NCBI RefSeq assembly: GCF_001194135.2
Contig: NC_069001.1
Coordinates: forward strand, 9,682,750-9,738,774
Length of the DNA: 56,025 nt
Reading direction: 5' to 3'
Source of the DNA: Octopus bimaculoides
Lineage: Eukaryota
The position numbers and the translations under genes were made by a program. The notes beneath the pieces were generated by a model. The model was given only the letters and a program-made list of their open reading frames with translations. It was not told the origin of the DNA and searched no databases. Shown here in pieces: positions 11,991-53,739 of the stretch (the first letter of the stretch is position 1; each line of letters starts with the position of its first letter).

Positions 11991-12362
11991 GTGGGTACGC
12001 AATGGCCCAGTAGTTAGGGCAGTGGGATCGCGGTTTCGATTCCCAGACCGAGCGTTATGAGTGTTTATTGAGCGAAAACGCCTAAAGCTCCACGAGGCTC
12101 CGGCGGAGGCTTGTGGTAGCGAACCCTGCTGTACTATTTCACCACAACTTTCTCTCACTCTTTCTTCCTGTTTCCGCTATACCTGTATTTCAAAGGGACC
12201 ACCTTTGTCACGCTCTGTATCAAGCTGAATCGCCCCGAGAACTACGTTAAGGGTACAAAGTGTCTGTTGAGTGCTCAGCAACTTGCACGTTAATTTCACG
12301 AGCAGGCTGTTCTGTTGATCGGATCAACTGGAACCCTCGTCGTCGTAACCGACGGAGTGCCA
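11991..12362 (+). mobile_element. SINE family C, near full length
   Basis: GCAATGGCCCAGTAGTTAGGGCAG (A-box), GGTTTCGATTCC (B-box), body, tail ending GACGGAGTGCCA. Confidence 0.9.
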
Positions 12363-12802
12363 CGAATTTCCNNNNNNNNNNNNNNNNNNNNNNNNNNNNN
12401 NNNNNNNNNNNNNNNNNNNNNNNNNNNNNNNNNNNNNNNNNNNNNNNNNNNNNNNNNNNNNNNNNNNNNNNNNNNNNNNNNNNNNNNNNNNNNNNNNNNN
12501 NNNNNNNNNNNNNNNNNNNNNNNNNNNNNNNNNNNNNNNNNNNNNNNNNNNNNNNNNNNNNNNNNNNNNNNNNNNNNNNNNNNNNNNNNNNNNNNNNNNN
12601 NNNNNNNNNNNNNNNNNNNNNNNNNNNNNNNNNNNNNNNNNNNNNNNNNNNNNNNNNNNNNNNNNNNNNNNNNNNNNNNNNNNNNNNNNNNNNNNNNNNN
12701 NNNNNNNNNNNNNNNNCTAGGGGCCTCACAGATCTAGGGACCTCACGGCTGTAGGCGCTTCACAGGTCTAAGGGCACATATTTTGTAGCCTAATATCAAC
12801 AG

Positions 12803-13175
12803 GATGGCAGTGTAGTAAGAAGCTTGCTTCCCAATAACTTGGTCCCAGGTTCAGTCCTACTGCATGGCACCTTGGGCAAGTGTATTCTACTATAGCCTCG
12901 AGCCGACCAAAGCTTTGTGAGTGGATTTGGTAGACAGAAACTGAAAGTAGCCCGTTTTATGTGTGTGTGTGTACCTGTGTTTGTCCCCAAATCATCGCTC
13001 GACAACCGCTGTCGGTGTGCTTACGTCCCCGTAACTTAGAGGTTCGAGAGACCGATAGAATACGTACTAGACTTAAAAGATAAGTCCTGGGGTCGAGTTG
13101 CTCGACTACAATACTTCAATGCGGCGCTCCAGCATGGCTGCAGACTGAAACAAGTAAAAGAATAAATAGATACCA
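12803..13175 (+). mobile_element. SINE family B, near full length
   Basis: GGTTCAGTCC B-box, CCTTGGGCAAGTG, central (TG)n, tail CTCCAGCATGGCTGCAGACTGAAACAAGTAAAAGA. Confidence 0.9.
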
Positions 13176-15169: not shown

Positions 15170-15358
15170 TACACGTTTCAGTCGATGGAGTACGACCATG
15201 CTGGAGCACTGGTTTGAATGGCTTTTAGCCGAATGAATCGCTAACAGATATTTTCTTTAAATCCTGGTACTTACTCTATCGTTCTCTTTTGTCGAACAGC
15301 TAAGTTATGGAACGTAAACAAACCAAAGATTATCAAGCTTTGAGGGAGACAAATACAC

Positions 15359-16184: not shown

Positions 16185-16300
16185 GAAGGCGAGTTCAGTC
16201 CCTCTGCGTGGCATCTTGGGCAAGAGACTTCTACTGTAACTTCGAGCCGACCAAAGCCTTGTTAGTGCATTAGGTAAACGGAAACTGAAAGCCAGTCGTG
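16185..16300 (+). mobile_element. SINE-B 5' fragment
   Basis: GAGTTCAGTCCCTCTGCGTGGCATCTTGGGCAAG..CGACCAAAGCCTTG..ACGGAAACTGAAAG. Confidence 0.75.
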
Positions 16301-17140: not shown

Positions 17141-17333
17141 TCTCTTTTACTTGTTTCAGTCATTTGACTGCGGCCATGCTGGAGCACCGCCTTTTAGTCG
17201 AGAAAATCGACCCCAGGTCTTATTTTTGTAAGCTTAGTACTTATGCTATCGGTTTCTTTTGCCGAACCGCTAAGTTACGGGGACGTAAACACACCAGCAT
17301 CGATTGTCAAGCGATGTTGGGGGTACAAACACA

Positions 17334-17371
<38 letters not shown>

Positions 17372-17543
17372 CATATATACGACGGGCTTCTTTCAGTTTC
17401 CGTCTACCAAATCCACTCACAAGGCTTTGGCCGGCCCGAGGCTATAGTAGAAGACACTTACTCGCCCAAGGTGCCACGCAGCGGGACAGAACCTGGAACC
17501 ATGTGGTTGGTAAGCAAGCTACTTACCACACAGCCACTCCTGG
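17141..17543 (-). mobile_element. SINE family B, full length and well conserved
   Basis: Complete tail, central (CA)n(TA)n and head; used here as the reference copy. Confidence 0.92.
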
Positions 17544-17679
17544 TCCTATGTAAGAATGATGAACAACTTTAATCAATTTTCAAGCCTTATTGGATTTCTC
17601 ATCAGAGGCGTCCACAACATTCTGACTGATAATGATAATAATGCTAATATCTATATCAATATTCATTCTAATATTTACT

Positions 17680-17860
17680 CGTGTGTGTGTGTTGGTGTGT
17701 TTGCGACCCCGTAAACTAGCAGTTCGGCAAAACGGTCCGATAGAATAAGTAGCAGGCTTTAAAAAAAAACAAAAAAACTGGGGTTCGATTCATTCGACTA
17801 AAAAATTCTACGCAGTGCTCCAGCATGGACGCAGACTGAATCAAGTGAAAGATAAAAAGC
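17680..17860 (+). mobile_element. SINE-B 3' half
   Basis: CCCCGTAAACTAGCAGTTCGGCAAAA..CGATAGAATAAGTA..CTCCAGCATGGACGCAGACTGAA. Confidence 0.75.
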
Positions 17861-18984: not shown

Positions 18985-19442
18985 ATACTTATTTCAGTCA
19001 TTAGTCTGCGGCCGTGCTGAAGAATTTTTAGTCATGCGAATCGACCCCAGTAGTATTTTTTTTNNNNNNNNNNNNNNNNNNNNNNNNNNNNNNNNNNNNN
19101 NNNNNNNNNNNNNNNNNNNNNNNNNNNNNNNNNNNNNNNNNNNNNNNNNNNNNNNNNNNNNNNNNNNNNNNNNNNNNNNNNNNNNNNNNNNNNNNNNNNN
19201 NNNNNNNNNNNNNNNNNNNNNNNNNNNNNNNNNNNNNNNNNNNNNNNNNNNNNNNNNNNNNNNNNNNNNNNNNNNNNNNNNNNNNNNNNNNNNNNNNNNN
19301 NNNNNNNNNNNNNNNNNNNNNNNNNNNNNNNNNNNNNNNNNNNNNNNNNNNNNNNNNNNNNNNNNNNNNNNNNNNNNNNNNNNNNNNNNNNNNNNNNNNN
19401 NNNNNNNNNNNNNNNNNNNNNNNNNNNNNNNNNNNNNNNNNN

Positions 19443-19476
<34 letters not shown>

Positions 19477-19640
19477 CGGCCTTCTTTCAGTTTCCGTCTA
19501 CCAAATCCACTCCAGTCTTTGGTCGACCTGAGGCTAAGCTCTAGTAGAAGACACTTGCCCAAGGTGTCACGCAGCTGAATTGAACCCTGACCCATGTGGT
19601 TTGGAAGCAAACTTCTTATGACACAGCCAGGCCTACGTGT
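18985..19640 (-). mobile_element. SINE family B spanning an assembly gap
   Basis: Tail remnant before the gap; 5' half at 19474-19640 after (TA)n. Confidence 0.75.
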
Positions 19641-21398
19641 ATAACCACGCCTGCCTTACTTGTGGTTGTGTGTTTAAGAAATTTGAAACTACTTAGTTTC
19701 GAGTTCAAATAACAGTGTAGACCACTACATACTTTTTAATGGAATCTATCAGAGACAGTGCATCGTCTTTTCATCTACGAGCTGAATATCATCTTAATAA
19801 CCATAAATTATCTGAAGTCTTTAGGCTATTAACCCGTACGATGTACCATCGTAGTTCCTAAAAGCCCTCTGCCCACTCATACTAGCGGTTTAATGAGGTG
19901 TAGCGTTTGGAGTGGATTCTTTGGTGTACTGCACCGTGTTAACCAGTTCTTACTTAAAATCACAAGCTAACTTTGTATTTATAAAATGCAGAGTGGTTTT
20001 CTGTTATATCTCTCGGAAAAATACGAAATGCAACTTATAAGACGATAAATACAGTACAAATCATTAAAGCTATTAAAACATAAAAATCTGTTTGATTCAC
20101 GAATTTCTTTAAATTTCTACATCAGCATTTCCGAACCATTTTCTGTTTTTTCATCTATAGAGCCATTTGATTCCGATTTTACACAGGAGGACCCTCCTAG
20201 ACATTCAATGCTTCAACAGAATCCCATCATTTTTATATCCGAATATTTTTAGGAAGTTTGTAAAATAATTGCTGAAATATTTTGCATATTGCAGGAGTAT
20301 AAGCAATTTTATTGCTCATAAATTTTAACAACAAAATCTTATATGGACTCCTAAATCTCATATGAATCCCTAAGCGTTCCATTAATTAAAACAGCTCGGT
20401 AGCTCTGCTCTTCGCTTCTTAGTCGATTAGACTTAGAGCCATTCAAGTCATTGCTATGTCTGTATTTCTCGACGCCACATAACTGAAAACCACCACTTAG
20501 CTGTTATTTCTACATTTTCTTTGTCTGAACTGTCTTGCATATATTACTTCATTCAACTAGATTCTACATTTTGATTATGTATCATCATCGACCAGTAAAT
20601 AAAATATACTTTTACGTAGTAAATATGTAGTTCTTGAATTTAGTCTCTATCTCTTTATGAACTATTGTAATAACAAACACACAGCCACATCAACACTTTG
20701 TACTGACAATATGTCGCCACTACAAGTAGAACCAACAACAACAACAAAAAGAACATCATCTGCATTAAGTATATGTTGTTGCTATTATGCAAAAGTGTCG
20801 TAAATCCAAGACGTGGCTTTTTCAGAAAACAAAGAAAAATAGTCTCACCATTTCATTTCGTTAGGTGCATAAAATCGTAACTCCATGCATGTATGATATT
20901 TTCAGTCAATATTTTCGCAAAACTGTCGTATGTGGGACTTGCTACACTTTAAAAAAATTTTTAAACCGTTGTACTACACTTTGACAATTTTTATCTGAAG
21001 TAGCTGGAATTACAATAGTTTGACGAAAAGAACCGGCTATTGCAAGCAAATTTAAATATTGAAAAAAAAAATGTATTTGGCCACATTTGGACATACTAAT
21101 AGCAACAATATAGAGTCGAGCTGCTTGGCAAACACACTCTCTAGATTCAAACTTTGGCTTAATAGTATCACATGGCGATACGCCAACGGCACGTGCATCA
21201 AGTTTACAGTGGACAGAGCCGTCACTATTTTCATATTGTTAATATGCTAAATATTTAAGGTGGAAAGGATTATACTAATGGATAGAAACTACACACGGTG
21301 TTGCGAACGAAAATTAATACAAGAAACAAAAGAGACGGAAAGATGGATCATTTGACAGAAGGTTCCAATTCTTCAGTTGTTTATAATTAATAATAAAA

Positions 21399-21615
21399 AG
21401 ACGGTGAAAGGATAGAAATCGTTAGCATGCCGGACAAAATGTTTAGCGGCGTTTCTTACGGCTTTACTTTCCACCGAGGTCGACTCGGCCTTTCATCTTT
21501 TCAGGGTCGATAAGATAAGTACCATTAGAGCACAGGGTCCAATATAATAGAATGCTACCTCAGAACAAACACACAAAATCCACGTTTTGTATCTACAGTA
21601 GAAAGGATTATAGGT
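21399..21615 (+). mobile_element. SINE family A, diverged, short tail
   Basis: AATCGTTAGCATGCCGGACAAAATG..GAGGTCGACTCGGCCTTTCATC..GGGTCGATAAGATAAGTACC. Confidence 0.75.
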
Positions 21616-23423: not shown

Positions 23424-23760
23424 CTTTTACCAGTCTTTTATTTCAGTCATTTGACTACAGCCATGCTGGAGCACCGCCTTTAGTCGAACAAAGCGACCCC
23501 AAGACTTATTCTTTGTAAGCCTAGTACTTATTCTATCGATCTCTTTTGCCGAACCGTTAAGTTACGGGAACGTAAACACACCAGCATCGGTTGGAGGGGA
23601 CAAACACAGAAATACACATACAGATATACGGCAGGCTTCTGTCAGTTTCCGTCTACCAAATCCACTCACAAGGCTTTGGTTGGCCCGAGGCTTATAGTAG
23701 AAGACACTTGCCCAAGGTGCCACGCGGTGGGACTGAACCAGGAACCATGTGGTTGGTAAG
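23424..23760 (-). mobile_element. SINE family B lacking the first ~30 nt of its head
   Basis: Tail through GGGACTGAACCAGGAACCATGTGGTTGGTAAGCA, then an abrupt switch to unrelated sequence. Confidence 0.88.
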
Positions 23761-24117
23761 CATCGCATGGGGGTGCGATTGGGTTGTGGTGTAAGGGATG
23801 AGAGGGTAAATGGAATGGAATAACCGAAAGAGTCACACAAGGAAAGGTCTCCCCCCTACATCGATATATTATAAAAATAGACACACAACCGCAGGGAGAG
23901 TGACAGGGAGCAATGTGGAATGAATATTTCCATTCCTGCCGAATTTCTTTTTTTTTATTTCTATTATTTATTTCATTGTCATAGCCTGTCACTAAATTGC
24001 TCATTAGTAGTGGAGCACTCTTAGTGACTGTGTGTCTGGATTAGATGAATTAATTGTATTTTGAGATTTGTAAGTGTCTGGTTGTTTCACCATGTTTCAA
24101 TTTGCTGTAATGTAGCC

Positions 24118-29499: not shown

Positions 29500-29765
29500 A
29501 ATGGCCCATTGGTTAGAGTGGCGGACTCGCGGTCGGAGGATCGCGATTTCGATTCCCAGACCGGGTGTTGTGTGTGTTTATTGAGCGCAAACACCTAAAG
29601 CTCCACGAGGATCAGGCATGGGGTGATGGCGACCCCTATCGTACTCTTTCGCTTCACATTTCTCTCACCGTCCAGCTGGTGAGGGGGAACACATACGCCA
29701 TAAAAACCGAGAAACCGAGCTCATGAGCCTGGCTAGGCTTTAGAAGGGCGCATAAGAAAAGATAG
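29500..29765 (+). mobile_element. Mosaic SINE: family-C head and body + alternative tail E (near-full second copy 29836-30140 across a gap)
   Basis: tRNA head AATGGCCCATTGGTTAGAGTGGCGGACTCGCGG, C body to ~29665, then CCAGCTGGTGAGGGGGAACACATACGCCATAAAAACCGAGAAACCGAGCTCATGAGCCTGGCTAGGCTTTAGAAGGGCGC. Confidence 0.75.
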
Positions 29766-30148
29766 CGCGCGCGCGAGAGAGAGAGAGAGGGGGGGGCGGA
29801 TAATTCTGAGAATTTCCCGATCTCANNNNNNNNNNGCGGACTCGCGGTCGGAGGATCGCGATTTCGATTCCCAGACCGGGTGTTGTGTGTGTTTATTGAG
29901 CGCAAACACCTAAAGCTCCACGAGGATCAGGCATGGGGTGATGGCGACCCCTATCGTACTCTTTCGCTTCACATTTCTCTCACCGTCCAGCTGGTGAGGG
30001 GGAACACATACGCCATAAAAACCGAGAAACCGAGCTCATGAGCCTGGCTAGGCTTTAGAAGGGCGCATAAGAAAAGATAGCGCGCGCGCGAGAGAGAGAG
30101 AGAGGGGGGGGCGGATAATTCTGAGAATTTCCCGATCTCATCCGTGGA

Positions 30149-32574: not shown

Positions 32575-33120
32575 TTTTTTTTACTTGTTTCAATCATTTG
32601 ACTGCGGCCATGCTGGAGCACCACCTTTAGTCGAGAAAATCGACCTCGGGACTTATTCTTTGTAAGCCTAGTACTTATTCTATCGGGCTCTTTTTGCCGA
32701 ACCGCTAGATGACGGGGACATAAACACACCAGCATCGGTTGTCAAGCAATGCTAGGGGGNNNNNNNNNNNNNNNNNNNNNNNNNNNNNNNNNNNNNNNNN
32801 NNNNNNNNNNNNNNNNNNNNNNNNNNNNNNNNNNNNNNNNNNNNNNNNNNNNNNNNNNNNNNNNNNNNNNNNNNNNNNNNNNNNNNNNNNNNNNNNNNNN
32901 NNNNNNNNNNNNNNNNNNNNNNNNNNNNNNNNNNNNNNNNNNNNNNNNNNNNNNNNNNNNNNNNNNNNNNNNNNNNNNNNNNNNNNNNNNNNNNNNNNNN
33001 NNNNNNNNNNNNNNNNNNNNNNNAGTAGAAGACACTTGCCCAAGATGCCACGCAGTGGGACTGAACCCAGAACCATGTGGTTGGTAAGCAAGCTACTTAC
33101 CAAACAGTCACTCCTGCGCC
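32575..33120 (-). mobile_element. SINE family B spanning a gap
   Basis: Tail at 32575-32759 and head at 33024-33120. Confidence 0.85.
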
Positions 33121-33867
33121 TATATTAATAATAAATGTATAAAATGAATAAAAATGCTAATTCTCTATTTTTAACTTTTCTAGCTGATGTTCGCTCGGTT
33201 CGCCTATAAAATTAGTCAACTTATTTCAAATCTGCTTCATTTTATATTTTTTAAAAAATAAATGTCTAAAAAATGTAAGAATGTTTTATTTAAGCCATAA
33301 TAAATAAATGAAACATGTAGATCGCATACTAAATTAGAATTTGACTTTTGTAGATCACGTTGGGTGGATCGCATACCACAGTAGCACCGACTGCAGTATT
33401 ACTCATGCTTCTGCTGGTATATGGAGAGGTGGTGCTGGTAGTAGTGGTGGTGGTAGTGCAGGTGGAAGTGGTGTTGGTAGTTGTTGTAGTGGTGTTGATT
33501 GCAGTGTTTTTAGAATTTGTGATGCTAGTTATCGTTATCACAACCTTAAAGGCAAGAGTATAGGTGGTTTTAGTGGTAAGAAAATGTTATGGTTGGTTTT
33601 GATGGTAGTAGTAGCAGTGAAAATGGTGGGCATTAATAAACGAAGGGAGCCTTTACTTTCTTATGATAGAAAGATGGTCTATGATTGAGCTTTTAGCAGC
33701 TGATCTTCTATCCTTGAATGCTAGACTGGTCCTGTCTCGTCGATAGGAGTTTATCCAATGTTATTGGAATGTTTCAGTAGAATTTCCCGTTATACTTCTG
33801 AAGTGCTTAGGTAAGCAATTGAGTAGTTGAGGCTCTCTAAATATCAGACAGGTAGGTAGGTACAATC

Positions 33868-34186
33868 GTTGTTGTTGGCACTCCGTCGCTTACGACGTCG
33901 AGGGTTCCAGTTGATCCGACCAACGGAAGAGCCTGCTCGTGAAATTAACGTGCAAGTGGCTGAGTTCCAGTTGATCCGACCAACGGAACAGCCTGCTCGT
34001 GAAATTAACGTGCAAGTGGCTGAGCACTCCACAGACACGTGTACCCTTAACGTAGTTCTCGGGGATATTCAGCGTGACACAGTGTGACAAGGCTGACCCT
34101 TTGAATTACAAGCCCAACAGAAACAGGAAGTAAGAGTGAGAGAAAGTTGTGCTGAAAGAGTAGAGCAGGGTTCGCCACCATCCCCT
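33868..34186 (-). mobile_element. SINE family C 3' part with a 60-bp internal tandem duplication
   Basis: 33904-33963 repeated at 33964-34023 with one mismatch. Confidence 0.9.
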
Positions 34187-34969: not shown

Positions 34970-35150
34970 CATCGCTTGACAACCGATGCTGGTGTGTTTA
35001 CGCCCCCGTAACTCAGCGGTTCGGCAAAAAGAAACCGATAGAATAAGTACCAGGCTTACAAAGAATAAGTCCTGGGGTCGATTTGCTCAACCGAAGGCGG
35101 TGCTCCAGTATGGCCGCAGTCAAATGACAAACAAATAAAAGAGTAAAAGA
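34970..35150 (+). mobile_element. SINE-B 3' half
   Basis: ATCGCTTGACAACCGATGCTGGTG..GGCGGTGCTCCAGTATGGCCGCAGTCAAATGAC. Confidence 0.88.
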
Positions 35151-43380: not shown

Positions 43381-44215
43381 CGCGAGCTGGCAGAAAAGTT
43401 AGCTCGCCGGGTGAAATGCTTAGTGGTATATCGTCTGCCGTTGCGTTTTGAGTTCAAATTCCGCCGAGGTTGAATTTGCTTTATCCTTTCGGGGTCGATT
43501 AAATAAGTACTAGTTATGCACTGGGGTCGATATAATTGACTTAATCCGTTTGTCTGTCCTTGTTTGTCTTCTCTGTGTGTTATTTCTTTACTACCCACAA
43601 GGGGCTACACACAGAGGGGACAAACAAAGACAGTGTGTAGCCCCTTGTGGGCAGAAATGCTTAGCGGCATTTTGTCTGCCGTTACGTTCTGAGTTCAAAT
43701 TCCACGTAAGTTGACTTTGCATTCATCTTTTCGGGGTCGATCTAATCGACTTAATCCCTTTGCCTCTCCTTGTTTGTCCCTTCTATGTTTGGCCCCTTGT
43801 GAGCAATAAAAGAGATAAGAAACGTTAGCACGCCTGGCGAAATGCTTAGCGGTATTTCGTCTGTCTTTACGTTCTTTTAAATTTCGCCGAGGTGGACTTT
43901 GCCTTTCATCCTTTCGAGGGGCGATAAATTAAGTACCAGTTGCGTACTGGTGTCAATCTAATCGACTGGCGCCCCTCTCAACATTTCGGGCTTTGTGCGT
44001 AGAGTAGAAAAGTATAATTGAAGGCGGCGAACCGGCAGAAACGTTAGCATGCCGGACGAAATGCTTAGAGGTATTTCGTCTGTCTTTACGTTCTCAGTTC
44101 AAATTTCGCCGAAGTCGACTTTGCCTTTCATCCTTTCGGAGTCGATAAATTAAGCACCAGTTGCGTTTTGGGGTCGATCTAATCGACTGGCCCCCTTCCC
44201 CAACGTTTCTTACTG
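43381..44215 (+). mobile_element. Cluster of four tandem or nested SINE-A copies plus one inverted tail
   Basis: Copies start at about 43381, 43650, 43818 and 44022; inverted 52-bp tail at 43581-43632. Confidence 0.88.
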
Positions 44216-44439
44216 TCTACTAGGTGTTTTGCTTCATATGGAAGTCGAGCTGAAAACATAACACGATTAATTCTTGGACAAAATCCCGATGATTTGTACC
44301 GTCATGATGACAATATATCTGAAGTCAGCAAGAAGTTGTGCCCCCCTCACAACCCCTCATGTTACACGTGCACGCATTTATTCCCATACGCACATACACA
44401 TATGCACACGTGTGTGTTGTGTGTGTGTGTGTGTGTGAG

Positions 44440-44620
44440 TGCGCGTATCTTTGTGGCTGTGTTTGTCCTTCAACATTTTCCATCACCGCTTAGCTGTTTT
44501 TTCGTGCTCGTAACCTAGTGATTCGGCAAAAGACACCGATACAGTAAGTACTGGGGTCAATTCAATCGACTAAAAATGCTTCATGTCGGTGCCCCACCAT
44601 GGCTTTAGTCTAATAACTTT
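44440..44620 (+). mobile_element. SINE-B 3' half, diverged
   Basis: CGTAACCTAGTGATTCGGCAAAAGACACCGATAC..CTGGGGTCAATTCAATCGAC..GGTGCCCCACCATGGC. Confidence 0.7.
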
Positions 44621-44632
44621 TTAAAAGAAACG

Positions 44633-46480
44633 ATGGGCTTCTTTCAGTTTCCGTCTACCAAATTCACTTAAGGTTTTGCTTGGCCCAAACTATAAGAAGA
44701 CTCTTGGAATTGAACCCAGGACCATGTGGTTGGAAAGCAAGCTTCTTAGCACATGACCACGCATGCGCCTATGCATACTAGTACAAATACGTCCTAAGAA
44801 GACTCTTGGGATTGAACCCAGGACCATGTGGTTGGAAAGCAAGCTTCTTAGCGCATAACCACGCATGCGCCTATGCATACTAGTACAAATACGTCCTAAG
44901 AAGACTCTTGGGATTGAACCCAGGACCATGTGCTTGGAAAGCAAGCTTCTTAGCGCATAACCACGCATGCGCTTATGCGTACTAGTACAAATACGTCCTA
45001 AGACTCTTGGGATTGAACCCAGGACCATGTTGTTGGAAAGCAAGCTTCTTAGCGCATAACCACGCATGCGCTTATGCATACTAGTATAAATACGTCCTAA
45101 GAAGACCCTTGGGATTGAAACCGGAACTCTGGCAAGCTTCTTAGCGCATAATCACGCATGCGCTTATGCATACTAGCACACATCCTACACACACACTAAT
45201 TCATAAAACAACAAATAATCACTTTAACATTTTTTATTTTCTTTAATATAAAAAATGGTTTCTGGTACACAAATTCACACAAAAGCAAATCACTTAAAAA
45301 TTCTTTATTTTCTGTAAAATATTAAAAATGGTGGTTTCTTGGCCTGAGGCTATAAGTAGAAGACTCTTGGAATTGGACCCGGAACTGATAATAAGACTTG
45401 CTTCTTAGCGCATAACCACGCATGCGCCTTATGTGATACGTCCTAAATGGTTTCTGGTACATAAATTCACACAAAACAAATCACTTAAAATTCTTTATTT
45501 TCTGTAAAATATTTAAAATGGTGGTTTCTTACCAGAGGCTATAAGTAGAAGACCTGGGATTGAACCCGGAACTGTGGTTGGAAAGCAAGCTTCANNNNNN
45601 NNNNNNNNNNNNNNNNNNNNNNNNNNNNNNNNNNNNNNNNNNNNNNNNNNNNNNNNNNNNNNNNNNNNNNNNNNNNNNNNNNNNNNNNNNNNNNNNNNNN
45701 NNNNNNNNNNNNNNNNNNNNNNNNNNNNNNNNNNNNNNNNNNNNNNNNNNNNNNNNNNNNNNNNNNNNNNNNNNNNNNNNNNNNNNNNNNNNNNNNNNNN
45801 NNNNNNNNNNNNNNNNNNNNNNNCCTTGGGATTGAAACCGGAACTCTGGCAAGCTTCTTAGCGCATAATCACGCATGCGCTTATGCATACTAGCACACAT
45901 CCTACACACACACTAATTCATAAAACAACAAATAATCACTTTAACATTTTTTATTTTCTTTAATATAAAAAATGGTTTCTGGTACACAAATTCACACAAA
46001 AGCAAATCACTTAAAAATTCTTTATTTTCTGTAAAATATTAAAAATGGTGGTTTCTTGGCCTGAGGCTATAAGTAGAAGACTCTTGGAATTGGACCCGGA
46101 ACTGATAATAAGACTTGCTTCTTAGCGCATAACCACGCATGCGCCTTATGTGATACGTCCTAAATGGTTTCTGGTACATAAATTCACACAAAACAAATCA
46201 CTTAAAATTCTTTATTTTCTGTAAAATATTTAAAATGGTGGTTTCTTACCAGAGGCTATAAGTAGAAGACCTGGGATTGAACCCGGAACTGTGGTTGGAA
46301 AGCAAGCTTCATAGCACATAACCACGCATGCGCCTATGCATGCTGGTACAAATACGTCCTACAAAACAAATTATCACTAATTCTTTTCTTTAAAATACAA
46401 ATTCACACAAAACAAATTTATCACTAAAAATTCTTTATTTTCTTTAAAATAATATTTAAAAATGGTGGTTTCTGGTTGGA
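44633..46480 (-). repeat. SINE-B-head-derived tandem array (102-bp monomers, then ~192-bp second-tier units)
   Basis: Monomers start at 44694, 44796, 44898, 45000 (99 bp) and 45099; later heads alternate with an AT-rich spacer (starts 45253 and 45445). The founder SINE body is at 44633-44770. Confidence 0.9.
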
Positions 46481-47839
46481 ACCCCCAGGTTTTCTGCACT
46501 GAAAGAGCCTGGCTAAGAGTTTATACGGTTACGTGACACAGCCCGGACACCTTGCAACTATGTTATGACACCAACCAGCATGTTGCAGAGGGTGTTTAAA
46601 AACTCAAAGGTTCATAAAACCGACAACATTATCGACTAGTAATTGTTTTTAACGACAGTTTCTATCTTGTTGATATGAAGCTAAAAATATACCTAATTTA
46701 ATTATGACGTAATAAAGTTATGCAAATGGCTGTAGATGCATGAATCGAATCGAGAAGCTATCGTCCTCGTGCGGTTTCCTAATACTTAAACAATGTCCCT
46801 GAAAATCACGTTTTAGTGATTTGACTGCCCAACCGTACTCCGTACCGGCTGTCTAACAACGAATCGACCGCCACCACCCAACGGAACCGAAAAACGACCA
46901 TCGGAAGATCCATATGCAGCTAGTCACGAATGGGTTGAGCAGCATCTAAAATAAGGTTAAGGGGTGGAACCTACGGAAAATGGAAAAAAAACCTAGCTCC
47001 TACTCCTTTGGAACTAATGATTCCCTACTCTAGGTAACTAAGGACCGCTCGAGTATACATAGCTCTGAAGGCCGATACCAGCTACTACAAGAAATGCATG
47101 TATTGTCTGTATCTGTGTTTGTGTATTTGCGTTGTGTATGCATGTGTGTGTATATGTGTTTTTGTGTGTGTGCATAAGTGTGTGTAAGTAGAATAAAATG
47201 CTTACCTATTTTAGACGTCGGTTCAATATCTCAATGCCAAAGGATTATCGACAAGAGTGTCTTATAAATCCGATGTTGGTGTCTGCTGAAGCATTGACGA
47301 TATGAAGATAAGCCGCTCTGCGCCTTCTATTTATAAGAAATTCGGCAATTATGACATCATTATGATGATGTCATAATGAACAATATCAACGTTTTTAATC
47401 TAAATATCCAAAAATATAAAAAATTGCCTCTCTTTTTGTCTCTCTCTCATTTTTTAAATTGAAAAATCAGCATTGAAGTGACGTCATAATACGATATTTT
47501 GCGAAATTTCCAAAATGTCTTCCTTCATGAAAATAATTAAATTAAAAAAAATATTTAGATATTTAATGTTATGAAAACATTTATTTCAAAAGCAAAATAA
47601 AAATACTACAATTGATAATATTAATAATAATAATAATAATCTTTGATTTAAGAACAGGGCAGAAAATTTAAGTGCGTAAGCTTAATTGTGGGGCGTCGCC
47701 TTGGGATGTATTTGTCGAATGAATCGACCACAGTGCTTATTATTTTAAGCCTGGTATTTATTGTATCGGTTTATTTTGCCGAACCGCTATCTATCTATCT
47801 ATTTTTCTATCTATCTAACTAACAATTTTAGCAAATCAG

Positions 47840-49851: not shown

Positions 49852-50470
49852 AGGTGCAAGCGTGGATGTGTGGTAAGAGCTCTGCTGCCCAACCATATGG
49901 TTCCGGGTTGAGTTCCGCTGCATGGCACCTTGAACAACTAACTGTCTTCTACTAAAAAGCCTTGTGAGAAGATTTGGTTAATGGTAGCTGAAAGAAACCC
50001 GTCATATCTATCTATCTATCTATCTTATTTCTCTGTTGCCCACAAGGGGCTAAACGTAGAGGGGACAAACAAGGATAGACAAAGGGATTAAGCCGATTAC
50101 ATCGAACCCAGTGCGTAACTGGTACTTAATTTATCGACACCCAAAAGGATGAAAGGCAAAGTCGACATTCGGTGGAATTTGAACTCAGAACGTAACGTCA
50201 GACGAAATACCTCTAAGCATTTTGCCTGGCGTGTTAACGTCTCTGCCAGCTCACCGCCTTATCTATCTATCTGTCTATCTATCTATCTATCTATCTATCT
50301 ATGTGTGTGTGTGTGTGTGTGTTTCTGTCTGCGTTTGACCCCCACTACCGCTTGCCAGCTGGTATTGTTGTTTACGTCCCCGTAACATAGTGGTTCGGCA
50401 AAAGGAACCGATAGAATATGTACTAGGCTTACATTAAAAAAAAAAAAAAACAAGTCCTGGAATATCTGAT
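49852..50470 (+). mobile_element. SINE family B split by a nested SINE-A
   Basis: Head 49852-50005 and 3' part 50300-50470 flank (TCTA)n and the inserted A copy. Confidence 0.8.
50024..50259 (-). mobile_element. SINE family A, full length, long tail
   Basis: From TTATTTCTCTGTTGCCCACAAGGGGCTAAAC to TCTGCCAGCTCACCGCC. Confidence 0.9.
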
Positions 50471-50902: not shown

Positions 50903-51145
50903 TATATTTCTTTCTTTATTGCCCACAAGGGGCTAAAAATAGATGGGACAAACAAGGACAGACAAAGGGAGTAAGTGGATTACATCGACCCCAGTGCGTA
51001 ACTGGTACTTATATAATCGACTCCGAAAGGATGAAAGACAAAGTTGACCTCGGCAGAATTTGAACTCAAAACGTAAAGGCAGGCGAAATACCACTAAGTA
51101 TTTCGCCCGACGTGCTAACGATTCTGCCAGCTCGCCGCCTTTATG
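50903..51145 (-). mobile_element. SINE family A, full length, long tail, 12-bp TSD
   Basis: GAAAGATAATGT at 50891-50902 and 51146-51157 flanks the element. Confidence 0.9.
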
Positions 51146-53339: not shown

Positions 53340-53699
53340 CCAAAGGGATTAAGTCGATTAAATCGAGTGGTACTTAATTTATCAACCCCGAAAGGATGAA
53401 AGGCAAAGTCAACCTCGGCGGAATTTGAACTCAGAACGTAACGGCAGACGAAATACCGTTAAGCATTTCGCCCGGCATGCTAACGTTTCTTATTTCTTTA
53501 TTGCCCGCAAGGGGACAAACATAGAGGGGACAAACAAGGACAGACAAAGGAATTAAGTCGATTACATCGACCCCAGTGCGTAACTGGTACTTAATTTATT
53601 GACCCCGAAAGGATGAAAGGCAAAGTCGACTTCGGCGGAATTTGAACTCAGAACGTAACGGCAGAGGAAATACCGCTAAGCATTTCGCCCGGCGTGCTA
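53340..53699 (-). mobile_element. SINE-A dimer (long-tail copy joined to a head-truncated copy)
   Basis: Copy 53489-53699 ends AATAAAGAAATAA on the minus strand and directly abuts GAAACGTTAGCA of copy 53340-53488. Confidence 0.88.
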
Positions 53700-53739
53700 A
53701 GAATGTAACATTGTGATACTTCATGTAAAGTAAATATAA

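What the first reader, a model, noticed from the sequence alone, without database searches (positions are those of the whole stretch)
44633..46480. A satellite being born from a SINE tRNA head: tandem Pol III B-boxes with two-tier structure
The founder SINE-B (44633-44770) lost ~20 nt between CTTG and GGGA, and all units inherit that deletion. The head plus ~30 nt of flank was amplified as 102, 102, 102 and 99-bp near-identical monomers, then as ~192-bp units with an AT-rich spacer. Each 102/99-bp monomer has a consensus-matching B-box (minus strand GGTTCAATCCC or GGTTCAATTCC, e.g. 44808-44818), a degenerate A-box and ACGCATGCGC (9/10 to the NRF1/Ewg palindrome). Clustered TFIIIC sites act as boundaries in other organisms, so a new insulator or Pol III array upstream of LMO4 is possible (inference). 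True copy number is uncertain because of the 45595-45823 gap.
Basis: partly seen in the sequence, partly recalled or inferred. Interest (0 to 1): 0.7.

Follow-up and report, generated by a model that had tools for sequence, protein, structure and literature searches.

The report
SINE-derived tandem repeat, partly assembly-duplicated
A copy of a common short mobile element (SINE) about 38 kb upstream of an LMO4-type gene was duplicated head-to-tail into a roughly 1.2-kb minisatellite, a known kind of event; part of the printed array is probably one stretch written on both sides of an assembly gap, and nothing shows a function.

Summary
The repeat is real. TRF finds 4.9 copies of a 102-bp unit at 44693-45180 (91% match), followed by longer units of about 192 bp.

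All units lack the same 19 nt found in seven other copies of the SINE family in the window.

Two corrections:
- **Gap duplication.** The 488 bases left of the gap (45107-45594) are identical, with no mismatch and flush to both contig ends, to the 488 bases right of it (45824-46311). Two other gaps show the same pattern. The four long units are therefore most likely two, and the array about 1.17 kb.
- **Order of events.** The long units keep ancestral SINE body sequence that the 102-mers lack, so they cannot derive from them. The 102-mers are the youngest tier.

The anatomy is tandem units plus a longer terminal unit that runs to the SINE 3' end. This matches published SINE-derived satellites in squamates and tandem SINE arrays in bivalves.

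No tool supports tRNA folding. The A box is degenerate (5-6 of 9). TFIIIC, insulator or Pol III function is pure inference. Whether the monomer is specific to this locus could not be tested. This is an ordinary new member of a known kind.

The parts
44418..44632 (+). Left boundary. A 5'-truncated piece of the 3' half ('X') of another copy of the composite SINE. It meets the terminal unit tail-to-tail and is not part of the array.
   Evidence: 44418-44552 matches 17236-17373, 23520-23580, 32667-32728 and 19018-19052. In each of those places the match lies 3' of a SINE body, in the same orientation.
44633..44770 (-). Terminal unit U0. It has the head, a 9/9 B box (GGTTCAATTCC), the 19-nt deletion, and the complete SINE body down to ...GAAGCCCATCG.
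   Evidence: alignment to the family consensus, score 162, running to consensus position 168.
44693..45097 (-). Four short monomers of 102, 102, 102 and 99 bp (U0 head, U1, U2, U3). Each consists of a 25-nt linker GGACGTATTTGTACTAGTATGCATA, the head, and AAGAGTCTTCTTA. They are 94-97% alike and each has a 9/9 B box.
45098..45183 (-). Degenerate junction unit U4. It has a deletion of about 10 nt in the anticodon-like region and an 8/9 B box (GTTTCAATCCC). Its head is of the long-unit type and its 3' end of the short-unit type.
45184..45343 (-). Two copies (S1, S2) of an AT-rich spacer module of about 75 nt. Each ends in AATGG(TGG)TTTCT(T)GG on the + strand.
   Evidence: 45193-45259 against 45267-45332, 78% identity. 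There is no copy elsewhere in the window.
45344..45445 (-). Long unit L1. It has the SINE body part ...TCTTCTACTTATAGCCTCAGGCCAAGAAACC, a decayed head with an 8/9 B box (GGTCCAATTCC), and a shortened linker.
45446..45594 (-). Spacer S3 and the left part of long unit L2 (9/9 B box at 45556-45566). The contig ends here.
   Evidence: 45445-45574 is 91% identical to 45253-45387, giving a 192-bp period.
45595..45823 (.). Assembly gap of 229 N.
45824..46311 (-). Exact second printing of 45107-45594 (U4, S1, S2, L1, S3 and part of L2). Most likely an unmerged contig overlap.
   Evidence: 488 of 488 identical and flush to both contig ends; the same pattern at gaps 3063-3072 (61 nt) and 29826-29835 (305 nt).
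46312..46359 (-). The rest of the L2 head (with ACGCATGCGC at 46324-46333) and its linker GGACGTATTTGTACCAGCATGCATA.
46360..46476 (-). Spacer copies S4a (partial) and S4b.
   Evidence: 46397-46473 is 86% identical to 45269-45339.
46477..46515 (-). Decayed remnant of a further unit (sense strand ...CCTGGGGGTTCCAACCAGAAACC). This is the right end of the array.
   Evidence: weak alignment, score 23. The reading is by eye and the identification is tentative.

Best explanation
One copy of a dispersed Pol III-type SINE lies antisense on the + strand and lacks the 19 nt that follow the B box. DNA-level tandem duplication, by unequal crossing-over or replication slippage, turned it into a small minisatellite.

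An older tier of units of about 192 bp was duplicated first. Each holds a linker, the head, part of the SINE body and an AT-rich spacer.

A shorter 102-bp variant (linker plus head) then arose and was amplified 3-4 times next to the terminal unit, which still runs to the SINE 3' end. This is the youngest tier.

The B boxes and the GCGCATGCGT palindrome are passengers inherited from the source copy. The array has no demonstrated function.

The printed array is about 717 bases too long, because the same 488-base stretch is written on both sides of the gap.

Shown: the tandem structure, the common descent of the units, the relative ages, and the identity across the gap. Inferred: the duplication mechanism, the absence of function, and that the gap duplicate is an artefact.
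For: - **Tandem array.**
- **Homology to a dispersed family.** At least 7 other copies in the window carry (TA/TG)n tails.
- **Common descent.** 31 alignment columns (the 19-nt deletion plus 12 substitutions) are shared by all 7 units against the family consensus.
- **DNA-level duplication.** Linkers and spacers, which are not part of the SINE family, are homologous between units. This rules out repeated insertion.
- **Relative ages.** Identity is 94-97% within the 102-mers, 86-89% between L2 and the short units, and 75-79% for L1. L1 and L2 keep the ancestral TCTTCTAC-TATAGCCTC and TTCCGGG, which the 102-mers have lost.
- **Junctions.** Every linker is preceded by TA, and by TTA in 5 of 6 cases. 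This is compatible with microhomology at the duplication junction.
- **Gap duplicate.** 488 of 488 bases are identical and flush. Two other gaps in the window show the same pattern.
[quoted passage not shown] Bivalve arrays follow TSD1-(SINE)n-TSD1 with a complete final unit (PMC11481361).
Against: - No reads or second assembly were available, so copy number is unverified in both directions.
- This gap is 229 N, whereas the two other flush-duplicate gaps are 10 N. A real, very recent 717-bp higher-order duplication is therefore not excluded.
- The 19-nt deletion and the 12 shared substitutions could mark a SINE subfamily rather than a change at this locus.
- The array units have a better B box (A58 kept) than the other window copies, which read GGTTCAGTCCC. 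That is mildly unexpected for a decaying passenger.
- GCGCATGCGTG is the longest block that is invariant in all seven units. I did not show that this exceeds chance.
Confidence: 0.78

Rival explanations
1. The duplication across the gap is real. A block of about 717 bp (U4, spacers, L1, spacer, L2 and about 229 unread bases) is present twice as a very recent higher-order repeat. The array would then have four long units and be about 1.9 kb or longer.
For: - The gap carries a specific size estimate (229 N). The two other flush-duplicate gaps in the window carry the minimal 10 N.
- Tandem arrays do expand in higher-order blocks.
- A gap closer may have rejected the overlap because the span estimate was larger than the collapsed solution. 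This last point is inference.
Against: - There are no mismatches in 488 bases, while even the youngest 102-mers differ by 3%.
- The identity stops exactly at both contig ends. That is the signature of one stretch used to extend both contigs.
- The assembly does the same at non-tandem places, for example 29521-30140.
Confidence: 0.25
2. The array works as a cluster of B-box-only TFIIIC sites (ETC-like) or as a Pol III transcription array. It would form a chromatin boundary or a regulatory element upstream of LMO4, possibly helped by NRF1/Ewg-type binding to GCGCATGCGT.
For: - Five non-redundant units match GGTTCRANNCC at 9 of 9 positions and two more at 8 of 9.
- The A box is degenerate, as in ETC sites.
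- No run of four or more T lies on the sense strand between 44627 and 45204.
- The palindrome is intact in all seven units.
- TFIIIC binding to SINEs and ETC sites with architectural roles is documented in yeasts and mammals (PMC3744447 and PMC12409998, listed; otherwise established knowledge).
Against: - Every motif is inherited from the source SINE, so the motifs by themselves are not evidence of selection.
- The family is abundant, with at least 8 loci in 56 kb, so B boxes are commonplace in this genome.
- No tRNA-like fold is detectable.
- CpG observed/expected in the array (0.65-0.74) is no higher than the window mean of 0.87.
- No occupancy, expression or conservation data exist. The array lies 38 kb from the only LMO4 exon seen.
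Confidence: 0.05
3. The array is one copy of a dispersed composite element, such as a SINE subfamily with an internal variable tandem region or a multimeric SINE that retrotransposes as a unit. It would not be a duplication that arose at this locus.
For: - All units share 12 substitutions and the 19-nt deletion against the window's other copies. That could define a subfamily.
- The 102-mer domain lacks Pol III terminators, so a multi-head read-through transcript is conceivable.
- Multimeric SINEs exist in other taxa (PMC10702118).
Against: - There is no second copy of the linker, the spacer or the deleted-type head anywhere else in the 56-kb window.
- The long units contain many T runs that would stop Pol III.
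- No target-site duplication around the array was identified.
- The 129-aa ORF through the 102-mers has no relative among 5.8 billion proteins. This is a weak test.
Confidence: 0.07
4. The heads are independent insertions of the same SINE subfamily into one hotspot, not duplications.
For: - SINE copies cluster in this region.
- Four same-orientation copies of a second SINE-like family lie at 43382-44203, directly to the left.
Against: - Non-SINE linkers (22 of 24 identical between L2 and the short units) and spacers (78-95%) are repeated along with the heads.
- The units have no tails of their own.
- The period is regular.
Confidence: 0.02

Closest known systems
SINE-derived satellites (sSats) of squamate reptiles (Vassetzky, Kosushkin and Ryskov 2023, PMC10702118)
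   Same: - Tandem repeats made from part of a SINE.
- A longer terminal unit continues to the SINE terminus.
- Many loci have only a few units.
- Origin is attributed to unequal recombination, and such loci are viewed as the 'library' stage of satellite birth.
   Different: - The host here is an invertebrate. I believe from memory that it is a cephalopod, but no tool confirmed this.
- Only one locus is known, with about 7 units in two tiers and a non-SINE linker and spacer inside the unit.
- There is no evidence of multi-locus spread, subtelomeric location or homogenisation.
Tandem-like SINE arrays in bivalve molluscs, TSD1-(SINE)n-TSD1 type (PMC11481361)
   Same: - Arrays of 4-15 truncated SINE units, in which only the end units keep a complete SINE end (here U0 keeps the 3' end).
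- Found in or near genes.
- Unequal homologous recombination is the proposed mechanism.
   Different: - No target-site duplications were identified here.
- The units here include non-SINE sequence.
- The SINE family is different, and no highly conserved domain was tested.
Minisatellites derived from Alu and other transposable elements in the human genome
   Same: Local tandem amplification of a fragment of an abundant Pol III SINE, giving locus-specific arrays with variable unit number.
   Different: The source is 7SL-derived rather than a box A/B tRNA-type head. The human cases have population data, which are lacking here.
ETC (extra-TFIIIC) sites, tDNA insulators and SINE B2 boundary elements
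   Same: Consensus B boxes with poor or absent A boxes, occurring in clusters.
   Different: Those elements are defined by measured TFIIIC occupancy and boundary activity. Nothing of that kind is known here, and the resemblance is a motif match only.
False duplications flanking gaps in short-read scaffolds
   Same: An identical sequence is flush on both sides of an N run, and the pattern recurs at other gaps of the same assembly.
   Different: The N run here is 229 rather than the minimal 10, so a real duplication is not fully excluded.

Membership tests
SINE-derived tandem repeat / sSat-like array | The monomer is homologous to part of a SINE that is dispersed in the same genome. | tested here: met
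   at least 7 other copies in the window, 67-81% identical, with variable flanks and (TA/TG)n tails.
SINE-derived tandem repeat / sSat-like array | Head-to-tail tandem arrangement of several units. | tested here: met
   period 102, 4.9 copies, 91% match; two non-redundant long units at a 192-bp period.
SINE-derived tandem repeat / sSat-like array | A longer terminal unit extends to the SINE terminus. | tested here: met
   U0 (44633-44770) aligns to the consensus through ...GAAGCCCGTCGT.
SINE-derived tandem repeat / sSat-like array | Satellite properties: many loci or long arrays, with homogenisation. | not testable with these tools
   No host genome is in any searchable collection. Even the general SINE motif is absent from them. 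Within the window there is a single locus of about 1.17 kb.
tRNA-derived SINE (the head) | An internal Pol III promoter: a B box matching GGTTCRANNCC. | tested here: met
   9/9 in U0-U3 and L2, and 8/9 in U4 and L1.
tRNA-derived SINE (the head) | An A box matching TRGCNNAGTGG at tRNA-like spacing. | tested here: inconclusive
   5-6 of 9 in the array units. Where the best match is the homologous TGGTYATGYGC (U0 and L2) it starts 41-43 nt before the B box. The best other family copy scores 8 of 9.
tRNA-derived SINE (the head) | Recognisable similarity to a tRNA sequence or cloverleaf. | tested here: not met
   ARAGORN finds 0 genes. The Rfam tRNA model is silent at the gathering threshold and at E<=10, both on the monomer and on the best family copy. 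The only tRNA-like hit is mascRNA at E=2.4.
ETC / TFIIIC insulator | TFIIIC occupancy without full Pol III machinery, plus boundary activity. | not testable with these tools
   This needs CUT&RUN or ChIP and Hi-C. Only the B-box motif was shown.
NRF1/Ewg binding site | The palindrome GCGCATGCGC, and occupancy. | tested here: inconclusive
   ACGCATGCGC (9/10 to the palindrome) occurs in all 7 non-redundant units. The consensus is quoted from my own knowledge. Occupancy cannot be tested here.
Assembly false duplication at a gap | Identical sequence running flush to both contig ends. | tested here: met
   45107-45594 equals 45824-46311, 488 of 488.
Assembly false duplication at a gap | The same pattern at other gaps of the assembly. 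| tested here: met
   61 nt at gap 3063-3072 and 305 nt at gap 29826-29835.
Assembly false duplication at a gap | Single-copy read depth, or long reads showing one copy. | not testable with these tools
   No reads and no second assembly could be reached.

The most novel reading that the evidence does not exclude
The five to seven canonical B boxes with decayed A boxes, packed into about 1.2 kb and each next to an intact GCGCATGCGT palindrome, are bound by TFIIIC (and perhaps an NRF1/Ewg homologue). They would form a newly born chromatin boundary or regulatory hub upstream of LMO4. That would be a caught-in-the-act case of an insulator arising from tandem amplification of a SINE head in an invertebrate.
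Probability: 0.04. Interest if true: 0.6.

Novelty: new member of a known kind. Interest (0 to 1): 0.2.

Why it matters
As a structure it adds one small example, apparently from a mollusc, to the documented route from SINE to tandem repeat. Its tiers are clear enough to order the duplication events.

Its practical value is as a caution. A quarter of the printed array is the same sequence written twice around a gap, and the same artefact recurs in this assembly. Counts of repeats, motifs or 'units' near gaps in this genome should therefore not be taken at face value.

It would matter biologically only if TFIIIC binding or boundary activity were shown.

Tried and rejected
- **tRNA detection.** ARAGORN on the window and Rfam at gathering and at E<=10 on the array, a single monomer and the best family copy gave no tRNA hit. 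'tRNA head' therefore rests on box motifs only.
- **Coding potential.** The 129-aa ORF that runs through the 102-mers (102 = 34 codons) has no exact record and no homologue. I treat it as a by-product of the period.
- **Independent copy of the locus.** The LMO4 exon ORF is not on record either. Its relatives sit on contigs too short to reach 38 kb.
- **Locus specificity.** The metagenome and prokaryote-genome collections hold neither the monomer nor the general SINE motif, so the test could not be made.
- **Literature search for the SINE consensus as a string.** It found nothing. My recollection that this is the abundant octopus SINE stays unverified, and nothing in the report depends on it.
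- **Spacer or linker as decayed SINE 3' body or tail.** This would make the long unit a whole SINE. Support is only marginal for one segment (CTTTTGTGTGAATTTGTGTACCAGAAAC against CTTGTGAGTGGATTTGGTAGACGGAAAC; 11-22 of 500 shuffles do as well). It is not significant for the other spacers or for the linker. I left it open.
- **CpG content as a sign of protection or youth.** Nothing unusual was found.

Full report
**The gap first.** The window has 19 runs of N. For the run at 45595-45823, the 488 bases immediately to its left (45107-45594) are identical, without a single mismatch, to the 488 bases immediately to its right (45824-46311). The identity runs exactly to both contig ends. My first attempt was one base out of register.

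The same flush, exact duplication occurs at two other gaps of the window. One is 61 nt at 3063-3072. The other is 305 nt at 29826-29835, which TRF reports as a 315-bp 'repeat' of 2.0 copies at 100%. So this assembly tends to print one stretch on both sides of a gap.

The youngest true repeat units in the array differ by about 3%. A 0 in 488 difference that stops precisely at the contig ends is therefore best read as an unmerged overlap. I put this at about 70-75%.

The remaining doubt has two sources. This gap carries a size estimate of 229 N, whereas the other two carry the minimal 10 N. And repeat arrays can be either under- or over-assembled.

The consequence is that the bases on the two sides of the gap are not independent observations. 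The minimal reconstruction drops 717 positions, and the array shrinks from 1883 to 1166 bases.

**What is in the sequence.**
- TRF finds a 102-bp period at 44693-45180, with 4.9 copies, 91% matches and score 780.
- The SINE sense strand is the window's minus strand.
- Read in sense, each short unit is a 25-nt linker GGACGTATTTGTACTAGTATGCATA, then the head GGCGCATGCGTGGTTATGCGCTAAGAAGCTTGCTTTCCAACCACATGGTCCTGGGTTCAATCCC, then AAGAGTCTTCTTA.
- The units are 102, 102, 102 and 99 bp and 94-97% alike. A fifth unit (45098-45183) has lost about 10 nt of the anticodon-like region.
- To the right follow AT-rich spacer modules of about 75 nt and two non-redundant long units, L1 and L2, at a 192-bp period. 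Then come two more spacer copies and a decayed remnant ending near 46515.
- The leftmost unit (44633-44770) is the only one that continues through the whole SINE body to ...CTGAAAGAAGCCCATCG.

**The parent family.** BLAST of the units against the window finds at least seven other copies: 3260-3406, 12816-12953, 16221-16291, 17379-17550, 19478-19618, 23634-23762 and 33056-33123. They are 67-81% identical.

Their alignment gives a consensus consisting of a head with box motifs, a body, and a (TA/TG)n tail. In four copies the tail is followed, in the same orientation, by a further conserved segment.

A 5'-truncated piece of that segment, in the opposite orientation, forms the left flank of the array (44418-44632). 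It meets the terminal unit tail-to-tail.

From memory the consensus resembles the very abundant octopus SINE. No tool confirmed the organism, and nothing below depends on it.

- *The shared deletion of about 20 nt is real.* All seven non-redundant units lack the 19 nt ACTGCGTGGCACCTTGGGC that every other family copy has directly after the B box. With 12 shared substitutions, that makes 31 alignment columns shared by all units against the family consensus. The units therefore have one common source. Whether the deletion happened at this locus or marks a subfamily cannot be decided from 56 kb.
- *The B boxes are real.* GGTTCAATYCC occurs six times, all in the array, against 0.02 expected. One of the six is the gap duplicate. 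Against GGTTCRANNCC, five non-redundant units score 9/9 and two score 8/9. The other family copies carry GGTTCAGTCCC, that is G at the position of the invariant A58, so the array's source had the better B box.
- *The A box is degenerate.* It scores 5-6 of 9 (in U0 and L2 the best match is the homologous TGGTYATGYGC), against 8 of 9 in the best other copy.
- *ACGCATGCGC is present in all units.* There are nine hits as printed and seven non-redundant. It arose from the family's GCGCAGGAGT by two substitutions.
- *The LMO4 neighbour is real.* The ORF at 6057-6332 on the minus strand is an LMO4-type first LIM domain (PDB LMO4 chains, E about 1e-29; homologues named LMO4). The array lies about 38.3 kb on its 5' side.

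First, the number of long units is most likely two, not four, as shown above.

Second, the order of events is wrong.
- The long units keep ancestral SINE sequence that the 102-mers and the terminal unit have lost: TCTTCTAC-TATAGCCTC..GGCCAAGAAACC of the body, and TTCCGGG before the B box.
- The terminal unit and the 102-mers share the derived GGTCCTGGG and TCTTCTTA.
- Lost sequence cannot be regained, so the long units do not derive from the short ones.
- Divergence agrees with this: 79% between L1 and L2, 75-89% between long and short units, and 94-97% within the short units. The long tier is older and the 102-mers are the latest expansion.
- The 'founder' is simply the terminal unit of the array. 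It has at least one private change.
- U4 is a junction unit, with a long-type head and a short-type 3' end.

Third, 'tRNA head' is not demonstrable. ARAGORN finds nothing in the window. The Rfam tRNA model is silent even at E<=10, both on a single monomer and on the best family copy.

**Mechanism.** The linkers are 22 of 24 identical between L2 and the short units, and the spacers are 78-95% identical. Neither is part of the SINE family, and both are repeated together with the heads. The array therefore grew by duplication of genomic DNA, not by repeated insertion.

Every linker is preceded by TA, and by TTA in five of six junctions. The terminal unit reads TCTTCTTA|TAG at the corresponding place. 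This is compatible with a microhomology-mediated first duplication, followed by unequal crossing-over or slippage. That step is inference.

I tested whether the spacer and linker are decayed SINE 3' body and tail, which would make the long unit a whole SINE. One collinear segment is marginally similar (11-22 of 500 shuffles do as well). The rest is not.

**Comparison with what is known.** The anatomy is that described for SINE-derived satellites in squamates: tandem repeats from a portion of a SINE, with a longer terminal unit that reaches the SINE terminus. Many such loci have only a few units, and they are interpreted as the first 'library' step of satellite genesis through unequal recombination (PMC10702118).

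In molluscs, bivalve genomes hold tandem SINE arrays of 4-15 units of the type TSD1-(SINE)n-TSD1, with truncated inner units and a complete final unit (PMC11481361).

The present array meets the structural features of this kind. The features that would make it a satellite, namely many loci or long homogenised arrays, could not be tested.

**Function.** The idea of a TFIIIC, insulator or Pol III array rests only on motifs that any copy of this SINE inherits. The relevant facts are these:
- TFIIIC does bind SINEs and B-box-only sites in other organisms (PMC3744447 and PMC12409998).
- The 102-mer domain has no run of four or more T on the sense strand.
- The palindrome block is invariant in all units.
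- On the other side, there are no occupancy, expression or conservation data, and CpG content is unremarkable.
- The family is common, with at least 8 loci in 56 kb.

I give the functional reading about 5%.

**Verdict.** This is a real, modest SINE-derived minisatellite of a known kind. It is over-counted in the assembly, has a two-tier history opposite in order to the one proposed, and has no evidence of function. Interest is low, about 0.2. The useful by-product is the demonstration that this assembly duplicates sequence across gaps.

Noticed in passing
window 3002-3133 and 29521-30140: Two further gaps (3063-3072 and 29826-29835, each 10 N) are flanked by exact, flush duplicates of 61 and 305 bases. 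TRF reports the second as a 315-bp repeat of 2.0 copies at 100%. These are probable unmerged contig overlaps, so any 'repeat' next to a gap in this assembly needs checking.
   Followed up: partly
window 43382-44203: Four same-orientation copies of a second SINE-like family lie head-to-tail directly left of the array, at 43382-43541, 43654-43751, 43818-43987 and 44021-44203 (77-87% alike). They contain ...GTTCAAATT(C/T)CGCCGA.GT.GACTTTGCCTTTCATCCTTTCGG.GTCGAT... Other copies lie at 45-209, 1580-1891, 21398-21524, 50091-50260, 50965-51141 and 53368-53700. I did not decide between old tandem duplication and an insertion hotspot.
   Followed up: partly
window 43594-43612 and 43633-43651: A perfect 19-nt inverted repeat (CCCACAAGGGGCTACACAC / GTGTGTAGCCCCTTGTGGG) with a 20-nt loop lies between two copies of that second SINE-like family.
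   Followed up: no
window 17236-17373, 23520-23580, 32667-32728, 19018-19052, 44418-44632: The SINE family appears to be composite. After the (TA/TG)n tail comes a further conserved segment of about 140-215 nt (...CGTAACCTAGTGATTCGGCAAAAGACACCGATACAGTAAGTACTGGGGTC...) in the same orientation. Isolated 5'-truncated copies of that segment also occur at 4742-4800, 15267-15307, 17696-17751, 34993-35050, 47754-47789 and 50366-50427.
   Followed up: partly
window 44690-45079, minus strand: A 129-aa ORF stays open through the 102-mers because 102 is 34 codons. It has no exact record and no homologue among 5.8 billion proteins, so I take it as non-coding.
   Followed up: yes
window 6057-6332, minus strand: This is the first coding exon of an LMO4-type LIM-only gene (MTPKTGG...CRNDYIR). 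The best solved-structure matches are LMO4 chains (E about 1e-29). The closest non-identical relative in the protein collection is 84% identical and sits on short Logan contigs.
   Followed up: partly
window 33904-34024; also 10491-11265, 12247-12754, 33869-34087: A 60-bp unit is duplicated at 98% inside another dispersed repeat. ORFs across that repeat recur with the motif ...RRRGFQLIR.TEQPAREINVQVAEHSTDT.
   Followed up: no
window 44759-46333 (seven non-redundant units): GCGCATGCGTG is the longest block that is invariant in all seven units, including the two most decayed ones. The 5' half of the head is generally better kept than the 3' half. I did not establish whether this exceeds chance or reflects gene conversion.
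   Followed up: partly
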